64,000 bases of DNA from Guillardia theta CCMP2712 (GCF_000315625.1 NW_005434659.1:495142-559141); one strand, 5' to 3'. Counted from the stretch's first letter, positions 33,735-41,650 are shown. Translations and numbers: made by a program. The notes: a model not told the origin generated them from the letters alone.

Positions 33735-36700
33735 TTAGCACGCAAACTTCCTCCGTCCTCCCGCGTACCTTCGAGTTGTCGCCCTCATGCAGGCAAGTGC
33801 AGCGCCGACGAGGCTCTGGGGAGGGTCAGCGGGGCCCAGTAGCCTGAAGGCACAAGGGAGGACCTGCGAGGACCGGGTCGACTTCTCGGACGTAGCGACA
33901 GGCTTGAAGCTGCCGGGGGAGCAAGGGTCACTGAGCAGAGGGACTGAGTCGCGGGCCTCGCACCTGGTGGCAGAGCTATGAGACAGGTAGCGGTGCCCCT
34001 CGTACAAGCTCGACTGCTCCACGTCATCGGGAGGCCACGAGACGCGGCCGCGGCTTCTCGAGGCAGGGAGGAGGGAGTGAGAGCTGAGCCGGCTCTTGCC
34101 TTGGTATGACCCCTTCCTCGACATGAGCTCTGACCGGAGGCTGCCACACCGTCACAACCACCGCACAAGCAACCGCACAGCCCTGCCTCGTCTCGAATCG
34201 TTTGCTCGCAGGAGACAGGTTCGCGCTGGGCCCTCCAGACTCTTTGAGGGCCGGGGCCTTGCTTGGAAGAGGAGAGAAGGAGGAGGAGGAGAACTGGAGC
34301 TGACTCTTCTGGTTGTCTGCATCGCCGTGAGAGTTCTGCCATCCGAGGACGTTGGTCGAGTCGCACGTCATCACGTCCCCACAGTTGCAGCACTGCGACG
34401 CAGCAGTCGCGTCAGACACGCTGCTCGTCCCCGTCCCCCCTCTCGCCCTCACCTGGATGATGGGAAACGATCCAAACTCGAGCGACAATGTTCCCCACAC
34501 GCGTTTCATGTCCGTCAGGCTGGACAAGATCCTGGGCGGGAGCTCGACTGCCGATTCGCCATCCTGAAAGCCAGCAGGTGACCAAGAGCACAGCAAGTGC
34601 AGTCAAAGGTACCACGAAGAGAGAACGAATGTCCGCGAACTGAATGCCCCACATCATGGTCGACCCGTGATAAAACTTCCCTGAGACTGAACTTTTCCTG
34701 CGCTCACTCACAAACAGCTTTCAAGCAATCATGCAAGTAGCACTTTGGCGCAGCCGAGCGGCTGCTCGCTTGAGACTTTTGGAGGCTGCCGCAAGTCTCG
34801 ATCTCGAGGGAGCATATCAGGTCCGTCGCTTCACGGATAAGTCAGGACTGCTCAAGTCAGGTTTGATCGAAGGAACCTTGGTCCCTCTGGATGTGATAGC
34901 TCCCGTAGTAGTTCGCTCCAAACAACAGTCTGCTCGTTGACTCTCTTTCCAACACCTCCTGCAACACCCAACAGCCTCACAAGCTCTGTCCCTCCCTCTC
35001 AATCCCTCTCACCGTCGCCAGGCAGAAAGTACCATCCTCCTTGAGCGTGAGGGACAGGGAAGCCGTGAAGGACTGACCGCTAGGTGGTGAAGAAGTCTTG
35101 GTGCGATCTGCAACGTACAACTTCCACATCAGCTTCACTGGAAGCCAGCAGGGGGGGTGGACCTTGTCGACTTTCTTTGGAGCGCCATGTACATTCCGAG
35201 CTGAACCTCACCTGCGGCTCTAGTCAGGAGTGATGCAGCCGAATCTTCCAAGAGACCATCGAGGGAGTGCGATCGACGACCAGCTCCTCGTCGTTCAACA
35301 GCCAGAGGTTGTTCCCGTCTGCTGCAGCGACATCATCGCCGTCACGAGCAGCGAGCGAGTTGGTGGAGAGGTTGTCGGGGCTCTGACTTCCGATCGAATC
35401 TCTGGGGCCATCAGTCAGTCGTTCTTGCCAGGCGCTCACAGACTTGACCTCGACTGCCCATTGAGCGCGTGAAAGGCAGGATGTGACAATAAAGATCGCC
35501 TATGGCATGCCGTGAGTCTGTAAGAGATCGCCGTGGCTGCGCCACGAACCTGCTGCTGTGTGAGGAGTTGGAAGACGAGTTGGAAGACGAGTTGGAAGAA
35601 TTGTTCTGTGAGGAAACGCTCTCCCCCCTCTTGTTCTCTGACTCGTTGCACATGTCTGCATTGTCATCTTTGATTTCCGGAAGGGCTCGATTGTTTGGAG
35701 TGTGAATGGCCGGGGCGCAAATCGGCGACAAGGTTTCTAATCCATCGCAGAATCTTGAGAGAAAGTCAGGGCAGAGCGCCCAGCAACCTTGTTCACCGAC
35801 CTGACCCTCGATCCTGGGCACACAAACCTCGGGCCGCTGCGACCTTTGAGGCAAGAAGCTGGAAATCTTTGAGCGTGTATGGTTAACAAGAATCACAGGG
35901 AGGACCTGGAGTAGCGGGAGTAGACGGAGCCACCTCTTGATGCTCTGAAACCAACGTCAGCACTTGTCGAGCGAGCTGTGTCGACTAGTCACCAGTGGCC
36001 CGTGGGCTCTCTGCAATGACTGAGTCTTGCGTTATGGACGGCCATTCAATCTTCTTCTGCTCGTTGTACTACATGAGGGCGGAGGGAAAGAGGCAGCCCA
36101 CGGACTCACCGAGCGAGGGGACTCGAGGCAGAAAGACTCGTTCTCGTGAATCTCCTTGTTCACAGTGTTGTCGTTGGGACTTGGGTCCTCTTGGCTCATG
36201 GCCGACTGGACAGGCGGTCAGTCATGTTCAACAGCACCAACACGTCATCACAGGAGCTACTGGAGTCAGATTGATGCTGATGGAAGTCTGACTCAGGAAG
36301 TTTGATCTGTGGGACCTGGTGAGAGTGAAAGGTGAACTACAAGTGCGAGCAGAAACCAGAGGCACCTGGGTCCGAGAGAGAGGTCGCCTGCTAGGCTCTC
36401 AGCCTGTGAAGCTTCTCGGAGGTGCTGGAGCTCACACTCAACGGGAGCAAGACAAGCGAGAGGGGAGGGTACGTTGGTTTGCATCGCACAGAAGAGATCA
36501 GCCATGCAAGGAGAGCCTGAGAGATTGGAGGCGTTGGAACCAAGAGGTGTGCACTCAAGGAAGGAAGGCTTCACGGGAGTTCCTTCCAAGCATGGGAAGA
36601 TTCCTCCTGCACGGCATCATCAGCGTGAGAAAAACTTGATAGCTGAGCAAGGGACCTTTCGAAGGTTGCTCGGGAGATTTGAGGTCTGTGATCCACGACT

Positions 36701-37016
36701 CAGGAAACTCTGGGTCTTCCTCTTCTTCTGAGGTGAAGGTCACGTTCTCGTCTTCCCGGAAGCTGTCGGGGTGAATGAGAGACTGCATGCCGATCGTCAA
36801 GTCCATGACAGTCTGAACTTCAGACTCCGAGGGGTCCTCCTTCTCAGACGCATCTTCCGCTGACGCCCCTTCCCTCTTCTCTGGGTGGTATGCCAGAGCC
36901 TCGTCGAGCGGTGGGAATGCAATTCTGTCATTCGCCTTGAACGGATTCCTGCGTTTGTTGTTGGGGTTTGAATTCTCCTCCGACGGTGCAGGAACATCAG
37001 TATGACCCCCTCGCAT
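33735..37016 (-). CDS. Multi-exon hypothetical protein(s); exon structure unresolved
   Basis: Chain of minus-strand protein-like ORFs with acidic/Ser-rich N-terminus (NNKRRNPF...) and intron-like spacers. No domain recognised. Confidence 0.35.
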
Positions 37017-37552
37017 CCTTGCTTTCTCGGCTGCTTTCCTTTCTCGCCTTCTCACATCACCCGTGAAAGCTGATGATTGTAACAAGATTTCAGTCAACAA
37101 CAGCAAACAAGGAGGTCAAACCAAGCAAAGGAGAAGCATGTGAGGCATCATGTGTTACGGATCCATGGAATCGTGATTCGATGAAACGTACAACAAACAA
37201 GACTGGAATGTACTATTTATCTACCAGACGGAATCATACAGGACGATTAGTGAAAAATTGAAACAAAATGAGCAAGTTAGAATGAGAAACTGAACAATAT
37301 ACAATGTACAGAAAAGGCAGGGAAAACAGAGAAATCAGTGGAGCTGAGATGATTTGGTGATATTAGCGGAGGAGGAAAGGCAACATGTAGTTTCGAAAGA
37401 AGCCCCAAATGAACGAGTGAACTTGCATGGATATGAAGTAGTTGAAATGAAGGGATGAGAGGGAAAACAGGGAAAAGGGAGAGGAAAGTCATCGGTAAAC
37501 AGATACGATGGGGGGGCAGGAATGAATATGGTGTGAATTTAAGAAGATCTAT

Positions 37553-37652
37553 CAGCAGAACAGCAGAGCAGCAGGAGCAGCAGGAGCAGCAGCAGCAGCA
37601 GCAGCAGGAGCAGCAGCAGCAGGAACAGGAGCAGCAGCAGCAGCAGCAGGAG
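37553..37652 (+). repeat. CAG/GAG trinucleotide repeat tract
   Basis: Imperfect (CAG)n run upstream of the 37805 gene. Confidence 0.9.
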
Positions 37653-37804
37653 CTCCTGTGTTGTTCACGCATGGACGGGCACGGGGGCGGGCAGGGTTCA
37701 GAGGCGGGTCAAGCTCTGAGCCACTAGCTGGAAGGCGTGGCTTATTTTCCGTTACAAACATGGAACCACATTTTGTAACGGTTTTTGGTGGTGAACCCGT
37801 AGGG

Positions 37805-38680
37805 ATGGAGGGGACAGATTTCGTGGTGGTGGGAGCCGGGAGGATGGGGGCGAGCATCGCAGGTTACCTTGCGACATGCGGGAAGACAGTAGGTATGCAC
37901 GACAGAACAGAGTTCGACATGAACAAAGGGATGGAGATCTTGCGGGCTGACATGAAGGCGTACGTGGAGAAAGGGCTGCTCACTGAACAGGACAAGGAGG
38001 AGGCGGTTAGGAGAATTCGGCTGGTGGGGACGCATGATGAGGTTGTTAAGTCCAAGGTCGTGATTGAGTGCATCTTCGAAAATGTTGAGGAGAAGAGAAA
38101 ACTCTTCAGCTCTCTCATTGCGTCAGCAGAGAAAGCGAAGCTGCGTCCGATCCTCGCCACAAACTCCATCAATTTCTCGATCAAGGACATTGTACCGAAC
38201 CGCGAGGAGATCTCGATGACGACGTGCGGGATCAGATTTCTCCATCCTGTATGGTTCATACCTCCTGTGGAGATTTCTTCGCAAGAAGAGCAGCGGCCGT
38301 TAGAGCTGGCCGCGCTATGGGAGGAGTGCGTAGGGCTTGGGCTAGAGCCTTTCTACATGTCAACCAAGGGGCTGAAAGGGTTTGGTCGTAGGAAGTTATA
38401 CCAGGATGAAATTGACAAGTACCATCAGCACCGCAAGGCGACTGTCTCCTCCTCCCTCCGCGGAGGACAGGCACCCGCGCCCAGAGGTTCGGGCAGTGTG
38501 GGGAGGGAGTGCGGTATCTGCATGGAGCCGAGCAGGGTGAGCATGATTTTGAGTCCCTGCGGGCACAAAGACCTCTGCAAGGAGTGCACGAACAAGATCA
38601 TGAGTGGAACTAGGACATGCCCGACATGCAGGAGGGCAGTGGAACGAGTGCTCGAGGCAGACTCGGGTGCTGACCTTTGA
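37805..38680 (+). CDS. 3-hydroxyacyl-CoA dehydrogenase-like NAD-binding domain fused to a C3HC4 RING finger
   Basis: VVVGAGRMGASIA Rossmann motif; VIECIFENVEEKRKLF; ILATNS; GIRFLHP; PVEI; RING CGIC...PCGHKDLCKEC...CPTCR. Intronless; alternative start at 37760. Confidence 0.9.
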   Translation: MEGTDFVVVGAGRMGASIAGYLATCGKTVGMHDRTEFDMNKGMEILRADMKAYVEKGLLTEQDKEEAVRRIRLVGTHDEVVKSKVVIECIFENVEEKRKLFSSLIASAEKAKLRPILATNSINFSIKDIVPNREEISMTTCGIRFLHPVWFIPPVEISSQEEQRPLELAALWEECVGLGLEPFYMSTKGLKGFGRRKLYQDEIDKYHQHRKATVSSSLRGGQAPAPRGSGSVGRECGICMEPSRVSMILSPCGHKDLCKECTNKIMSGTRTCPTCRRAVERVLEADSGADL

Positions 38681-39719
38681 AGGACTTGCAAGTGCAGCAG
38701 GTCGGAAGTGCCATGCGCATTGCTCCGGCCTTGAGATCGTGGCATGTATGAGATCTTGTTTCAGGACTAGCCTTGAGAGTGTTGTACCTATTAAATCTTT
38801 CTGCACATCGCTAAGGACACTGCCAGCATGTGTTGCTCCCCGGCAGCAAGATGCCTCGGCAAATCGGAAAACGTTGAGCAGAACCGTTGATGGCGTTATC
38901 CGGTTGCCTTGACAGCACAAAAGAAGGAATCAGTGTCTCAACAAGTAACTCGTTTCGTATCACAATCAACACTCATGCGAAGACTCGGATTAGCATAGCG
39001 AAAGTTATATTTCATGTTGCCAGCATGACAGCTGTCATAAGACAGAAAGAGAAGTTTGGTTATCTTCAGAGTCTTCAGTCTAAGGTCGACTTGCTAGGAG
39101 CCAACAGATGTCAAACGCTCATGGCATCAGCAGCATCGGCAGCATCGGCAGCGCATCATGAGCTCGAGCAAGCTCCCTTACCTCTCGCCAGCATGTCAGC
39201 GGCCGGGGCGAACCAACACTCATGACCCCACCCTTCTCTACAATGGGGGGTAGCTGAACAAGGGGTGGTATCTGATAGGTGGGTTCTGAATGAGGAATTC
39301 AGGGGTAGAGATGATAGGAATGTGGGTGAGAAGGGTGGGGTGGAATCAAAAGGGGGGGTAGAGTAGATCACAGTCTGAAGTAGGGGTAGTGGGGATGCGC
39401 CTCACCAGAGCATGTGCCGCTCATGGAGATCCGAAAGGGGGGGGGAGGGTGGGGAGGAGGAGGAGGAGGAGGAGGAGGAGGTGATGGAGAGGATATGAGT
39501 CTGAGAGGATATGAGATGGAGAAATATGAGACGGAAGGCAGCAGGGTAAGATCACAACAGAGCTCATGTGGAGGTTTGAGAAAGGAAATTGATGAAGGAG
39601 ATTTGTGCCTCAATGGCATGAAGCTCTCGACAACCATGCTAACTCTAGTCTTGAGGTAGGGGTGCAAGTTGCAACAAAGTGACATTGCTGCAGGATTGAT
39701 GCTCAACAACATCGTTGAG

Positions 39720-41650
39720 ATGGTTTGCCTTCGACATCATATCATGTTTCGCATTCTATTCCTTTGCGCCATGATATTTGTCAGGATGCCGCATGAAAGC
39801 ATGGCAAGCATGAATCAGTGCATGAGCTCAGTCAGACGATCGTGCGGCCTCTCTGCAGATGGTTGTCCGTCGGTTGTGAGGAGAAGAGGCATCAGGCTGC
39901 TCTGCTTGCGAGTGCGTGGGGGATCAACGAAATCGGATGAAAGCTCCTCTTCTATGGAGGATTCGGTGATGACACAAGACCTGCGGGTCCGTCAATGTGA
40001 CGGAGTTTGCTTCACAGACTCCGGACATTCAAAGTGACTTGTCCTCTCTTTCTTCATCGTCCGATGCAGTAACGTCGTCTTGTGTGCTGGTTGTAGCTGA
40101 TTGTGCTGCTGCAGCCAAAGCAAGCGAGCCATGAAGAAACGAAGCCGACAATTGGTGCTGTAAAAGACGAAGATGAGTCGGAGAAGAGTGATCCGGTGAA
40201 TGAGGCTATCTCGAGTGCTTTTGCTCTGGAGTATCAGCAGCGGAACGAGAAAACGAGGAGAGATTACGCCGCCAAGTTCCAACAGGGTGTTGGTAGTGGA
40301 ACAGCGGGAGTAGCGGGCGAGCCGACCGAGCTGCTTCCCAGGTTCGAGCCTGTCTTCAGCGGTCACAACATGGAGGTCATTGAGGATGGTCGAACGCTGC
40401 GGAAGAAGGACTGGAGCATCGTGCATGGCCGAGTCCTCGGTCTGGACAGGAAGGTGTGGTACGAAGACAAGGAAGAGAACGTGGCGTATGGCTACCAGGC
40501 TCCTTCCACCCTCGTGTTGGGCAGATCCTCCTCCATGGGCGTCGAGCGCTACTCCTTTCTCATCCGAGAGATCCAAGGAGGGAGCTTTTTCCTCGGCTTC
40601 CTCGAGCTTCCCTTCAAGCCGGTGCAGCAGTGGCCCAACTTCTTTGATACCTGCGCCTGGATGCTCGCAGATGGAGGGAACGTGTTCCGCACGGGGCCCG
40701 ACGTAGGAGGAGAAGGATACTACGACTCGCCGCAGGACGAGCTTCCTCTGATGGGGAGGAGGTTTGCGATGAAGACGGGGTTCGAGGTACTGACGGAGCT
40801 GCTGCGGCGGGAGCTCTACACTCAATACCCCAACGTGACGACACCAGGGATCTGGACGTTCGGGGAAGGGTCGGTGGTGTCGCTAGAGATCAACAGGGAG
40901 GAGAGGGAGCTGCGCTTCGAAGTTAACGACGCTCCTCCCTTCACCCTGCGCAACGTCTCCTCCTCCGCCCTGCCCTTCGTGACGCTCCTGTACCCCAACG
41001 ACACCGTCTCCCTCCTCTCTCCCGCCGAGGAGCAGTTCTTTCGTGCAAGGTGGAAGTCGAAGAGGAGGGGGCCGGAGGACCCGGACTACTGGGTGTGGGA
41101 CTGGGAGCGATGGCGCCCGTCCGACGGTGGTCTGATCTGGAAGGATGGGAAGTACGTGGAGGATCCTAACAAGAAGAACAGGTGGGAGAGAGGAAGGAGG
41201 GAAGAAGACGGGGACGGAGGGGGACGGAGGGTTTGACGAAATGCAGATGGTTTCCAACCTACGACAACAACGACGGGAGGAGCCCGGTCCCCGGGCTGAG
41301 CCTGACGGAGTACTTGATATTGAAGAGCTCGTATGACGAGCAGGCGCACGAGAAGCGGAAGAAGGAGAGGGAGAGACGAGACAAGAAGTATCGGCAACTC
41401 CTCCCTGCTTTCTCATGCGCTTCCGTTCCCCGCTACCTCCTCCACCCATCGTTGCTCTGCCAATCTCTCCCAGCCCTGTCCCCTCCGCACGTCTCTCCCC
41501 TTCCCCTCTTGACATCGAGATGGCAGGACACTGGAACGAGGGGACATGCCGAGAGAGCTGAAGCGAGTGATGAAGGAGGAGGACAAGGGTAAGTGGAGAG
41601 ATTTGGAGGAGAAGCTCGAGGAGCTGAAGAGCAGAGGCAAACTAAATTGA
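39720..41650 (+). CDS. Signal-peptide protein with SPRY/B30.2-like domain
   Basis: Hydrophobic leader MFRILFLCAMIFV; LRVRGG motif; SPRY-like GVERYSFLIREIQGGSFFLG...FGEGSVVSLEINREERELRFEVND...PFVTLLYPNDTVSL; spliced 3' exons ending SRGKLN*. Confidence 0.65.

What the first reader, a model, noticed from the sequence alone, without database searches (positions are those of the whole stretch)
37805..38680. Pseudo-dehydrogenase-RING fusion: candidate NAD(H)/acyl-CoA-sensing E3 ligase
Seen: an intact GxGxxG Rossmann domain of the 3-hydroxyacyl-CoA dehydrogenase family. The family's G(L/M)HFFNP motif reads GIRFLHP (catalytic His replaced by Arg, 38234-38236) and SNTSS reads TNSIN. The C-terminal dimerisation domain is replaced by a C3HC4 RING with IAP/MGRN1-type spacing. 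The gene is intronless among mostly intron-rich neighbours. Inference: a catalytically dead metabolite-binding module coupling redox or fatty-acid status to ubiquitination.
Basis: partly seen in the sequence, partly recalled or inferred. Interest (0 to 1): 0.75.

Follow-up and report, generated by a model that had tools for sequence, protein, structure and literature searches.

The report
Dead dehydrogenase fused to RING ligase
This alga makes a small protein that joins an NAD-binding dehydrogenase domain lacking its catalytic residues to a ubiquitin-ligase RING finger, and the same unstudied design occurs across eukaryotes, so it is a good candidate for a ligase tied to NAD metabolism.

Summary
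Window 37805-38680 (+) is a single-exon, transcribed and polyadenylated gene in a cryptophyte nuclear genome. The genome has 87.1 Mb in 669 contigs; an earlier scan note names it Guillardia theta.

The 291-aa product has three parts:
- A 3-hydroxyacyl-CoA dehydrogenase N-terminal Rossmann domain (Pfam 3HCDH_N, 8.6e-27).
- No 3HCDH C-terminal domain.
- A C-terminal C3HC4 RING of the IAP-like zf-C3HC4_3 type (2.7e-11).

The catalytic His codon reads Arg (38234-38236) and the catalytic Ser reads Ile.

The new point is that this is a family, not a one-off:
- A profile search finds dozens of 50%-identity clusters with the same architecture.
- Named members come from cryptophytes, haptophytes, green algae, stramenopiles, dinoflagellates, Acanthamoeba, choanoflagellates, a jellyfish and arthropods. 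A language-model lead also points to molluscs.
- In 56 aligned members the Arg is invariant and the Ser position is always Leu/Met/Ile.
- The NAD-binding residues, the eight zinc ligands and the RING linchpin Arg are invariant or nearly so.

The best reading is a RING E3 ligase whose inactive Rossmann module binds NAD(H) or a related ADP-nucleotide. Ligand binding, sensing and E3 activity are all inferred. No paper on the family was found.

The parts
37805..38680 (+). Single-exon coding sequence: 291 codons plus stop (TGA at 38678-38680).
   Evidence: ORF. Transcript contigs are colinear with the genome and show no joints. The Hanusia phi ortholog is 292 aa with the same N-terminus.
37760..37804 (+). 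Upstream in-frame ATG and 15 extra codons, probably not translated.
   Evidence: Not covered by RNA contigs, which begin at 37801, 37813 and 37862. Absent from the orthologs.
37805..38398 (+). HADH-type Rossmann (3HCDH_N) domain, residues 1-198.
   Evidence: Pfam 8.6e-27. AlphaFold2 model pLDDT 93.1. Foldseek rmsd 2.0-2.3 A over 183-185 columns to HBD N-domains 4kue and 6aa8.
37832..37849 (+). GxGxxG dinucleotide-binding loop, GAGRMG (residues 10-15).
   Evidence: G10, G12 and G15 are invariant in 56 of 56 family members.
37901..37903 (+). Asp33 at the end of strand beta-2. In Rossmann folds this acidic residue binds the adenine ribose and favours NAD over NADP.
   Evidence: Asp in 51 of 56 members. 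It aligns to the Asp of NAD+-bound HBD 9fbd. The role is from general knowledge of Rossmann folds.
38066..38095 (+). The E-x3-E-x4-K segment (Glu88, Glu92, Lys97), matching the family's VIEAxxE..K NAD-contact motif.
   Evidence: E88 in 56 of 56, position 92 is Glu or Asp in 56 of 56, K97 in 56 of 56. Aligned to the same motif in 9fbd and 4r1n.
38159..38173 (+). TNSIN, in place of the canonical SNTSS. The catalytic Ser position is Ile122.
   Evidence: maps HBD S117 to Ile122. In the family, position 122 is Leu, Met or Ile in 56 of 56.
38228..38251 (+). GIRFLHPV, in place of the canonical G(L/M)HFFNP. Arg144 (38234-38236) replaces the catalytic His, and His147 replaces the Asn.
   Evidence: alignment. 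R144, P148 and V149 are invariant, and F145 is in 55 of 56.
38270..38272 (+). Glu156, the counterpart of the Glu that pairs with the catalytic His (E150 in HBD, E170 in human HADH).
   Evidence: alignment. Glu in 50 of 56 members.
38402..38509 (+). Long helix (residues 200-218) followed by a flexible linker (219-235). This is all that stands where the C-terminal domain would be.
   Evidence: AlphaFold2 secondary structure; the block of ten residues 221-230, within the linker, averages pLDDT 66. No PF00725 hit.
38510..38659 (+). C3HC4 RING of the IAP-like zf-C3HC4_3 type (residues 236-285). Zinc ligands are C236, C239, C252, H254, C258, C261, C272 and C275. Ile238, Pro273 and Arg276 are the residues expected to engage and activate the E2.
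   Evidence: Pfam 2.7e-11. All eight ligands are invariant, R276 is in 55 of 56, P273 in 47 of 56, and position 238 is Val, Ile or Leu in 55 of 56. The roles of the residues are from general knowledge of RING E3s.
38681..38809 (+). 3' untranslated region, ending at a poly(A) addition site.
   Evidence: Raw RNA-Seq reads of X20 carry an untemplated run of A after 38809, and reads pile up on 38414-38866.

Best explanation
The gene encodes a member of an old, widespread and so far unnamed eukaryotic family of single-chain RING ubiquitin ligases.

The N-terminal two thirds is the NAD-binding Rossmann domain of the 3-hydroxyacyl-CoA dehydrogenase family. It keeps the residues that hold the ADP and ribose parts of NAD. 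It has lost the catalytic Ser (to a hydrophobic residue) and the catalytic His (to an invariant Arg). It has also lost the Asn that holds the nicotinamide amide, and the entire C-terminal substrate and dimerisation domain. It therefore cannot carry out the family's reaction.

A helix and a flexible linker tie it to a C-terminal IAP-like RING that keeps every zinc ligand, the E2-contact Ile and Pro, and the linchpin Arg.

The most likely mechanism: the RING recruits and activates an E2~ubiquitin, while the Rossmann module binds NAD+, NADH or a related ADP-nucleotide. That ligand state then sets either ligase activity or target choice.

Shown here: the gene, its transcript, the architecture, the family and its conservation pattern, and the fold.
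Inferred: nucleotide binding, E3 activity, and the coupling between them.
For: Gene and RNA:
- Colinear transcript contigs in three runs, and a poly(A) tail after 38809.

Domains and fold:
- Pfam hits.
- AlphaFold2 model with pLDDT 93.1 and pTM 0.87.
- Foldseek rmsd 2.0-2.3 A to HBD N-domains, including NAD+ complexes.

Family:
- 56 representative clusters at E <= 1e-30 in the profile search.
- 75 proteins fetched by then, mostly top-150 hits, carry a RING.
- Named members span at least six major eukaryote groups. An Atlas cluster of 152 members, mostly Mollusca, is a further lead.
- All 56 aligned members hit 3HCDH_N and zf-C3HC4_3, and PF00725 is not among the 25 families listed.

Conservation:
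- Invariant: G10, G12, G15, E88, K97, R144, P148, V149 and the eight zinc ligands.
- Near-invariant: D33, F145 and R276.
- Position 92 is always acidic, and position 122 is always Leu, Met or Ile.

Association and descent:
- Arg with RING 50, His without RING 39, His with RING 0.
- 69 Arg-type domains lie on one side of a branch from 39 canonical ones (SH-aLRT 91).

Link to NAD biology:
- One Arg-type relative carries a PARP catalytic domain instead of the RING, as one continuous ORF.
Against: - No binding or activity data exist for any member.
- The contacts at the nicotinamide end are replaced, so the ligand may not be NAD(H), or there may be no ligand.
- Glycine-rich loops and buried acidic residues can be conserved for folding alone.
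- RING fingers are fused to very many domains, and some RINGs are inactive.
- The invariant Arg is unexplained.
- I could not inspect model coordinates or the predicted error between domains, so how the Rossmann domain and the RING sit together is unknown.
Confidence: 0.55

Rival explanations
1. The Rossmann domain is only a scaffold. It has lost ligand binding as well as catalysis and now serves as a protein-binding, substrate-recruiting surface for the RING, with no metabolite input.
For: Catalytic residues and the nicotinamide-end contacts are replaced. RINGs commonly pair with protein-recognition domains (general knowledge).
Against: Residues with no obvious structural need are kept across very distant eukaryotes. 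Asp33 at the ribose position is in 51 of 56, position 92 is always acidic, and Lys97 is in 56 of 56. One relative carries a PARP domain, which uses NAD+.
Confidence: 0.2
2. The domain is still an enzyme with a changed reaction. The invariant Arg144 would polarise or bind a carboxylate or phosphate group of a new substrate, much as Arg does in lactate and malate dehydrogenases, and the RING would add regulation or targeting.
For: Arg144 is invariant at the exact catalytic position. Glu156 is retained in 50 of 56, and the NAD-binding residues are retained.
Against: No general base replaces the His. The Ser is always hydrophobic. The domain that forms the other wall of the active-site cleft is absent in all 56 members.
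Confidence: 0.1
3. The module holds NAD+ next to the RING-bound E2~ubiquitin so that NAD+ is used as a reagent. One example would be ADP-ribosylation of ubiquitin or of a target, as the Deltex RING-DTC ligases do. Alternatively it reads ADP-ribose marks, as RNF146 does.
For: An NAD-type pocket sits directly beside a RING. The same Arg-type domain is found fused to a PARP catalytic domain. The invariant Arg could hold a phosphate.
Against: There is no homology to DTC, WWE or macro domains. Rossmann dehydrogenase folds are not known to transfer ADP-ribose. This is analogy only.
Confidence: 0.07
4. Acyl-CoA or fatty-acid status sensor, the second half of the first reader's idea. The module would bind 3-hydroxyacyl- or 3-ketoacyl-CoA.
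For: It descends from an acyl-CoA dehydrogenase domain.
Against: The C-terminal domain that closes over the acyl-CoA is missing, and the Ser and His that grip the 3-oxygen are replaced.
Confidence: 0.05
5. Annotation or assembly artefact, or a decaying pseudogene made by a chance fusion.
For: None was found. The only oddity is that a public database holds a version that starts at residue 39.
Against: The reading frame is intact. The transcript is polyadenylated and seen in several studies. There is a 66-68% identical ortholog in Hanusia phi, and dozens of distant orthologs have the same architecture and invariant residues.
Confidence: 0.01

Closest known systems
3-hydroxyacyl-CoA / 3-hydroxybutyryl-CoA dehydrogenases (HADH, HBD, FadB dehydrogenase part; Pfam 3HCDH_N + 3HCDH)
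   Same: The N-terminal Rossmann domain is homologous. Its fold matches at 2.0-2.3 A, and the GxGxxG, Asp, E..E..K and [ST]N[TS] positions are kept.
   Different: There is no C-terminal domain. The catalytic Ser is Ile, the catalytic His is Arg and the Asn of HFFNP is His. A RING is attached. The same genome has a canonical paralog with SNTS, GLHFF and GFIGNR intact (L004).
IAP / MEX3C / MUL1 / MGRN1-type RING E3 ligases (Pfam zf-C3HC4_3)
   Same: C3HC4 ligands with the H-x3-C spacing, Ile after the first Cys pair, CPxC followed by Arg, and the RING about 10 residues from the C-terminus in most family members.
   Different: None of these carries a dehydrogenase-type Rossmann domain. Whether this RING dimerises is unknown.
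Rossmann-fold NAD(P)(H) sensors that have lost or nearly lost catalysis (NmrA, HSCARG/NMRAL1, CtBP, bacterial Rex). From my own knowledge.
   Same: The same logic: a dehydrogenase-type fold keeps dinucleotide binding and passes redox or NAD state to a regulatory output.
   Different: They come from different Rossmann families (short-chain or D-2-hydroxyacid dehydrogenase, Rex). Their outputs are transcription regulators reached through protein contacts, not a covalently fused ubiquitin ligase.
RNF146/Iduna (WWE-RING) and Deltex (RING-DTC) ligases. From my own knowledge.
   Same: A RING placed directly beside a pocket for an NAD-derived nucleotide. In RNF146 the ligand switches the RING on. In Deltex the NAD+ is used at the E2~Ub site.
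   Different: The ligand-binding folds are unrelated (WWE and DTC versus Rossmann). No evidence here for ADP-ribose binding or transfer.

Membership tests
3-hydroxyacyl-CoA dehydrogenase family (functional enzyme) | N-terminal NAD-binding Rossmann domain (PF02737) | tested here: met
   94.6 bits against a cut-off of 22. Foldseek rmsd 2.0-2.3 A over about 185 columns.
3-hydroxyacyl-CoA dehydrogenase family (functional enzyme) | C-terminal helical substrate and dimerisation domain (PF00725) | tested here: not met
   No hit at E <= 1. The model has one helix and then the RING. PF00725 is not among the 25 families listed for the 56 members.
3-hydroxyacyl-CoA dehydrogenase family (functional enzyme) | Catalytic Ser and His (HBD S117 and H138; human HADH S137 and H158) | tested here: not met
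   They align to Ile122 and Arg144. Across the family these are Leu/Met/Ile in 56 of 56 and Arg in 56 of 56.
3-hydroxyacyl-CoA dehydrogenase family (functional enzyme) | Glu partner of the catalytic His (HBD E150; human E170) | tested here: met
   Glu156 aligns to it. Glu in 50 of 56 members.
3-hydroxyacyl-CoA dehydrogenase family (functional enzyme) | Asn of the GF(I/V)xNR motif (HBD N188; human N208) | tested here: inconclusive
   By motif register, GFGRRK puts Arg196 there, and the family column is Leu or Arg. The Pfam alignment stops at profile position 160 of 180, so the register is not secure.
RING-type E3 ubiquitin ligase, zf-C3HC4_3 (IAP-like) subtype | Eight cross-brace zinc ligands, C3HC4, with H-x3-C spacing | tested here: met
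   43.5 bits against a cut-off of 27. All eight ligands are invariant in 56 of 56.
RING-type E3 ubiquitin ligase, zf-C3HC4_3 (IAP-like) subtype | E2-contact hydrophobic residue after the first Cys, Pro in CPxC, and the linchpin Arg after the last Cys | tested here: met
   Ile238 (Val, Ile or Leu in 55 of 56), Pro273 (47 of 56) and Arg276 (55 of 56). The roles of these positions come from knowledge of solved RING-E2~Ub complexes.
RING-type E3 ubiquitin ligase, zf-C3HC4_3 (IAP-like) subtype | Ubiquitin transfer from an E2 | not testable with these tools
   Needs an in vitro ubiquitination assay.
NAD(H)-sensing pseudo-dehydrogenase regulators (works-like class, not a homologous family) | Dinucleotide-binding residues kept while catalytic residues are lost | tested here: met
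   GxGxxG in 56 of 56, Asp33 in 51 of 56, an acidic residue at 92 in 56 of 56, and Lys97 in 56 of 56, against the Ser and His being replaced in 56 of 56.
NAD(H)-sensing pseudo-dehydrogenase regulators (works-like class, not a homologous family) | Measured binding of NAD+ or NADH, and a ligand-dependent output | not testable with these tools
   Needs binding and activity assays. The complex-prediction tool does not score ligands.

The most novel reading that the evidence does not exclude
A pan-eukaryotic family of ubiquitin ligases reads or uses NAD+, NADH or ADP-ribose through a disabled HADH-type Rossmann domain, with the invariant Arg holding part of the ligand. If so, this is a direct link between NAD metabolism or ADP-ribosylation and ubiquitination. 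It has gone unnoticed because none of the named members found here comes from a standard laboratory model organism.
Probability: 0.3. Interest if true: 0.8.

Novelty: new variant of a known kind. Interest (0 to 1): 0.62.

Why it matters
RING ligases that take a small-molecule input are few and mechanistically valuable; RNF146 and the Deltex ligases are the main examples. This family has a clear sequence signature: G-x-R-F-L-x-P, a hydrophobic residue at the Ser position, intact NAD-binding residues and a C-terminal IAP-like RING.

Its members come from algae, amoebae, choanoflagellates and invertebrate animals. Every member seen here is labelled hypothetical, generically named, or wrongly named as an active 3-hydroxybutyryl-CoA dehydrogenase.

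The protein is small (291 aa), single-exon and confidently modelled. The key claims can therefore be tested directly: nucleotide binding, absence of dehydrogenase activity, and E3 activity with and without ligand.

If the link holds, it gives a new route from NAD or redox state to protein turnover. It would also be a clean case of an enzyme domain turned into a regulatory module. At the least, it corrects database names.

Tried and rejected
- Homodimer prediction of the full-length protein, two copies with alignment A3. It returned no verdict (score 0.00 against a mark of 0.42). This is not evidence for or against dimerisation, so I make no dimer claim.
- First AlphaFold2 run with only four sequences. 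It gave pLDDT 62.6 and was too weak to use. The 56-sequence run replaced it.
- Word-index protein search with the family profile A3. Canonical bacterial dehydrogenases swamped the candidates and it added no named family members. It did show a 95%-identical 154-aa fragment (P0021) in a metagenome.
- Shape search of the ESM Atlas. It returned only canonical dehydrogenase clusters.
- Scan of viral contigs with A3.
- Five literature searches: domain names, Pfam names, accession numbers of named members, and sensor and pseudoenzyme terms. None found a paper on this architecture. The library lacks most subscription journals, so this is not proof that none exists.
- Upstream ATG at 37760 as the start codon. 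I rejected it in favour of 37805, because the orthologs and the RNA contigs do not cover it.
- Pseudogene or artefact. I rejected this (see rival explanations).

Full report
**What is in the sequence**

An open frame runs from 37658 to 38680 on the + strand, with in-frame ATGs at 37760 and 37805. I take 37805 as the start codon for three reasons:
- The full-length Hanusia phi ortholog (P0016, 292 aa) begins five residues before the first beta strand, as the 37805 start does.
- The more distant orthologs begin at the same point.
- The transcript contigs of three runs begin at 37801, 37813 and 37862 and do not cover 37760.

The product is 291 aa. All residue numbers below use this protein.

**Domains**

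- Pfam gives 3HCDH_N at 94.6 bits (cut-off 22) for residues 7-168, and zf-C3HC4_3 at 43.5 bits (cut-off 27) for residues 234-282.
- No match to the 3HCDH C-terminal domain appears even at E = 1.
- The best solved relatives of the first domain are 3-hydroxybutyryl-CoA dehydrogenases (9fbd at 8.3e-15; 4r1n, 4kue, 6aa8).
- The best solved relatives of the last domain are the RINGs of MEX3C, RNF4, cIAP1/2, RAD18 and MUL1.

**Residues**

The HMMER alignment to C. butyricum HBD gives this mapping:

| HBD residue | This protein |
|---|---|
| S117 | Ile122 |
| H138 | Arg144 |
| N141 | His147 |
| E150 | Glu156 |

- These are the studied catalytic residues. This shows in the titles of solved mutants: S117A of HBD, and S137C and E170Q of human HADH. 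It also agrees with what I know of the family.
- The dinucleotide loop reads GAGRMG.
- Asp33 closes strand beta-2, and the E-x3-E-x4-K segment (Glu88, Glu92, Lys97) matches the enzymes' VIEAxxE..K motif.
- RING spacing is C-x2-C-x12-C-x-H-x3-C-x2-C-x10-C-x2-C, followed directly by Arg276.

**It is a real, expressed, unspliced gene**

- The genome is 87.1 Mb in 669 contigs, and the window is contig 15, 495142-559141. The 66-68% identical ortholog in the cryptophyte Hanusia phi fits that.
- Sixteen public runs from seven studies hold the stretch.
- When laid on 36300-40800, the contigs of three runs cover 37801-39179, 37813-39240 and 37862-39223. They show no joint and no differing letter.
- The same runs carry spliced forms of both neighbours. 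These are 48-49 nt introns at 36424-36473 and 36605-36655 on the minus strand, and 46-52 nt GT..AG introns at 39964-40017 and 40068-40115 on the plus strand. The runs are therefore RNA-derived.
- Raw RNA-Seq reads of a fourth run pile up on 38414-38866 and carry an untemplated run of A after 38809. That gives a 129-nt 3' UTR on the + strand.
- The contigs run past that site because a convergent minus-strand transcript (38867-39319, with an intron at 38906-39181) abuts it.
- So the claim of an intronless gene among intron-bearing neighbours holds for the two flanking genes.

**It is a family, not a one-off**

- The word-index search found three other proteins with both domains: Hanusia phi at 66% identity, and two proteins from roughly 1-kb contigs at 34% and 29%.
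- A profile of these four was run against 1.84 billion cluster representatives. It gave 56 hits at E <= 1e-30, many covering profile positions 4-288.
- A pattern scan of all 164 proteins fetched by then found a C3HC4 RING in 75. Most of these are top-150 hits of that search, and nearly all of them read G-x-R-F-L-x-P.
- Among 110 hits with a recognisable domain, the counts are: Arg with RING 50, His without RING 39, Arg without RING 20, Gln with RING 1, and His with RING 0.

Named members:
- Emiliania huxleyi (XP_005784941.1, hypothetical)
- Pterosperma sp. CCMP1384
- Octactis speculum
- Noctiluca scintillans
- Acanthamoeba castellanii (XP_004356735.1, 656 aa)
- the choanoflagellates Salpingoeca punica and Barroeca monosierra
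- the jellyfish Sanderia malayensis
- the barnacle Amphibalanus amphitrite, where it is named 3-hydroxybutyryl-CoA dehydrogenase or a pyridoxal-pathway dehydrogenase
- the millipede Chamberlinius hualienensis

A language-model search also points to an Atlas cluster of 152 members with both Pfam domains, mostly from Mollusca (a lead only).

A quick maximum-likelihood tree of the Rossmann domains (LG+G4, SH-aLRT support, midpoint root for drawing only) shows the following:
- 69 Arg-type rows lie on one side of a branch (support 91), apart from 39 canonical rows.
- The named animal and choanoflagellate members fall in one sub-clade.
- The named dinoflagellate and stramenopile members fall in another.
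- The cryptophyte, green-alga and haptophyte members fall in a third.
- Guillardia and Hanusia are sisters (support 100).

This pattern fits one origin and mostly vertical descent, but it is not a rooted test. Guillardia has one copy of the fusion, plus a canonical paralog with intact SNTS, GLHFF and GFIGNR motifs.

**Conservation pattern**

In 56 aligned full-length members (A3):
- Invariant positions: G10, G12, G15, E88, K97, R144, P148, V149 and the eight zinc ligands.
- Near-invariant: D33 (51 of 56), V29, G26, F145 (55 of 56) and R276 (55 of 56).
- Position 92 is Glu or Asp in all members.
- Position 119 is Thr or Ser in all, N120 is in 44 of 56, and position 121 is Thr or Ser in 55 of 56.
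- Position 122, the catalytic Ser position, is Leu, Met or Ile in all.
- E156 is in 50 of 56.
- Position 147, the Asn of HFFNP, varies (Tyr, His, Phe or Ser).
- In the RING, position 238 is Val, Ile or Leu in 55 of 56 and Pro273 is in 47 of 56.
- Most members end about ten residues after the last Cys.
- All 56 hit 3HCDH_N and zf-C3HC4_3, and PF00725 is not among the families listed.

So selection keeps the ADP and ribose side of the NAD pocket and the E2-activating face of the RING. It also keeps a new Arg where the catalytic base was. The residues that act on the substrate and hold the nicotinamide amide are gone.

**Structure**

- With the 56-sequence alignment, AlphaFold2 gives pLDDT 93.1 and pTM 0.87.
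- The model has a Rossmann domain up to about residue 198, a helix at 200-218, a low-confidence linker at 219-235 and the RING at 236-285.
- Foldseek matches residues 1 to about 190 to HBD and HADH N-domains, at rmsd 2.0-2.3 A over 183-185 columns. The matches include NAD+ complexes.
- I could not read the coordinates or the inter-domain error, so the packing of the RING on the Rossmann domain is untested.

**How it most likely works**

The shown parts are listed above. What follows is inference from them.
- The protein cannot be a 3-hydroxyacyl-CoA dehydrogenase.
- It probably still binds an ADP-containing dinucleotide. Asp33 points to NAD over NADP, from general knowledge of Rossmann folds.
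- Its RING probably activates E2~ubiquitin, because the linchpin Arg and the E2-contact residues are kept.
- The simplest model is a ligase whose activity or target choice depends on the nucleotide bound. This resembles NmrA, HSCARG, CtBP or Rex in its input logic, and RNF146 or Deltex in having a RING beside an NAD-derived ligand (these comparisons are from my own knowledge).

Domain partners of the Arg-type module support a tie to NAD and suggest varied targeting:
- One relative replaces the RING with a PARP catalytic domain, in a single continuous ORF (P0071).
- One adds an N-terminal PX domain (P0063).
- One is a tandem duplication of the whole unit (P0035).

The role of Arg144 is unexplained. 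A salt bridge to Glu156 or a contact to a phosphate or carboxylate of the ligand are both possible.

**Novelty**

The two-domain architecture is visible in precomputed Pfam annotation. However, every named member is hypothetical, generic or misnamed. Five literature searches found no paper on it, and the library searched is incomplete. I rate it a new variant of a known kind: a RING E3 with an undescribed, conserved pseudo-dehydrogenase module.

**Limits**

- There is no experimental evidence for ligand binding or E3 activity.
- The tree is quick and unrooted.
- The taxonomic range rests on about 20 named clusters.
- The homodimer prediction gave no verdict.

Noticed in passing
window 37559-37659: An imperfect CAG/CAGGAG microsatellite of about 100 nt lies about 150 nt upstream of the start codon. 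It creates spurious poly-Gln, poly-Cys and poly-Ala ORFs on both strands, and it is where the read tool skipped repeats.
   Followed up: no
window 38867-39319 (minus strand): A convergent minus-strand transcript has a 274-nt intron (38906-39181, CT..AC on the + strand). Its 3' end lies within about 60 nt of the poly(A) site of the fusion gene. Transcriptome contigs merge the two transcripts. Thirteen reads also have a loose end at 38909 that points to a further joint.
   Followed up: partly
L013 1823-4042 (protein P0071, ENA metagenome contig): The same Arg-type 3HCDH_N domain (GLRFLHP) is fused to a PARP catalytic domain instead of a RING. It is one continuous 739-codon ORF. In the tree it is sister to the RING-bearing member P0025.
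   Followed up: partly
proteins P0063, P0035, P0188: Other architectures occur in the family. A millipede has PX + Rossmann + RING. One protein is a tandem duplication of the Rossmann-RING unit (669 aa). Acanthamoeba has a 656-aa form with about 190 extra N-terminal residues and a long insert before the RING.
   Followed up: partly
L004 1222-2157 (G000 contig 14, about 359.3-360.3 kb): This is the canonical 3-hydroxyacyl-CoA dehydrogenase paralog of the same genome. It has intact SNTS, GLHFF and GFIGNR motifs and an N-terminal extension that may be a targeting peptide. The ORF ends where an intron probably begins.
   Followed up: partly
window 37919-38677 (residue 39 onward): The ESM Atlas holds this protein only from residue 39 on. 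A public gene model may therefore be N-terminally truncated and lack the GxGxxG loop, which would hide the NAD-binding nature of the protein.
   Followed up: no
proteins P0055, P0186, P0187 (Amphibalanus amphitrite): These barnacle family members are named 3-hydroxybutyryl-CoA dehydrogenase, or 5-formyl-3-hydroxy-2-methylpyridine 4-carboxylate 5-dehydrogenase-like. P0055 at least reads GVRFLYP at the catalytic-His motif and carries a RING, so the names are probably wrong.
   Followed up: partly
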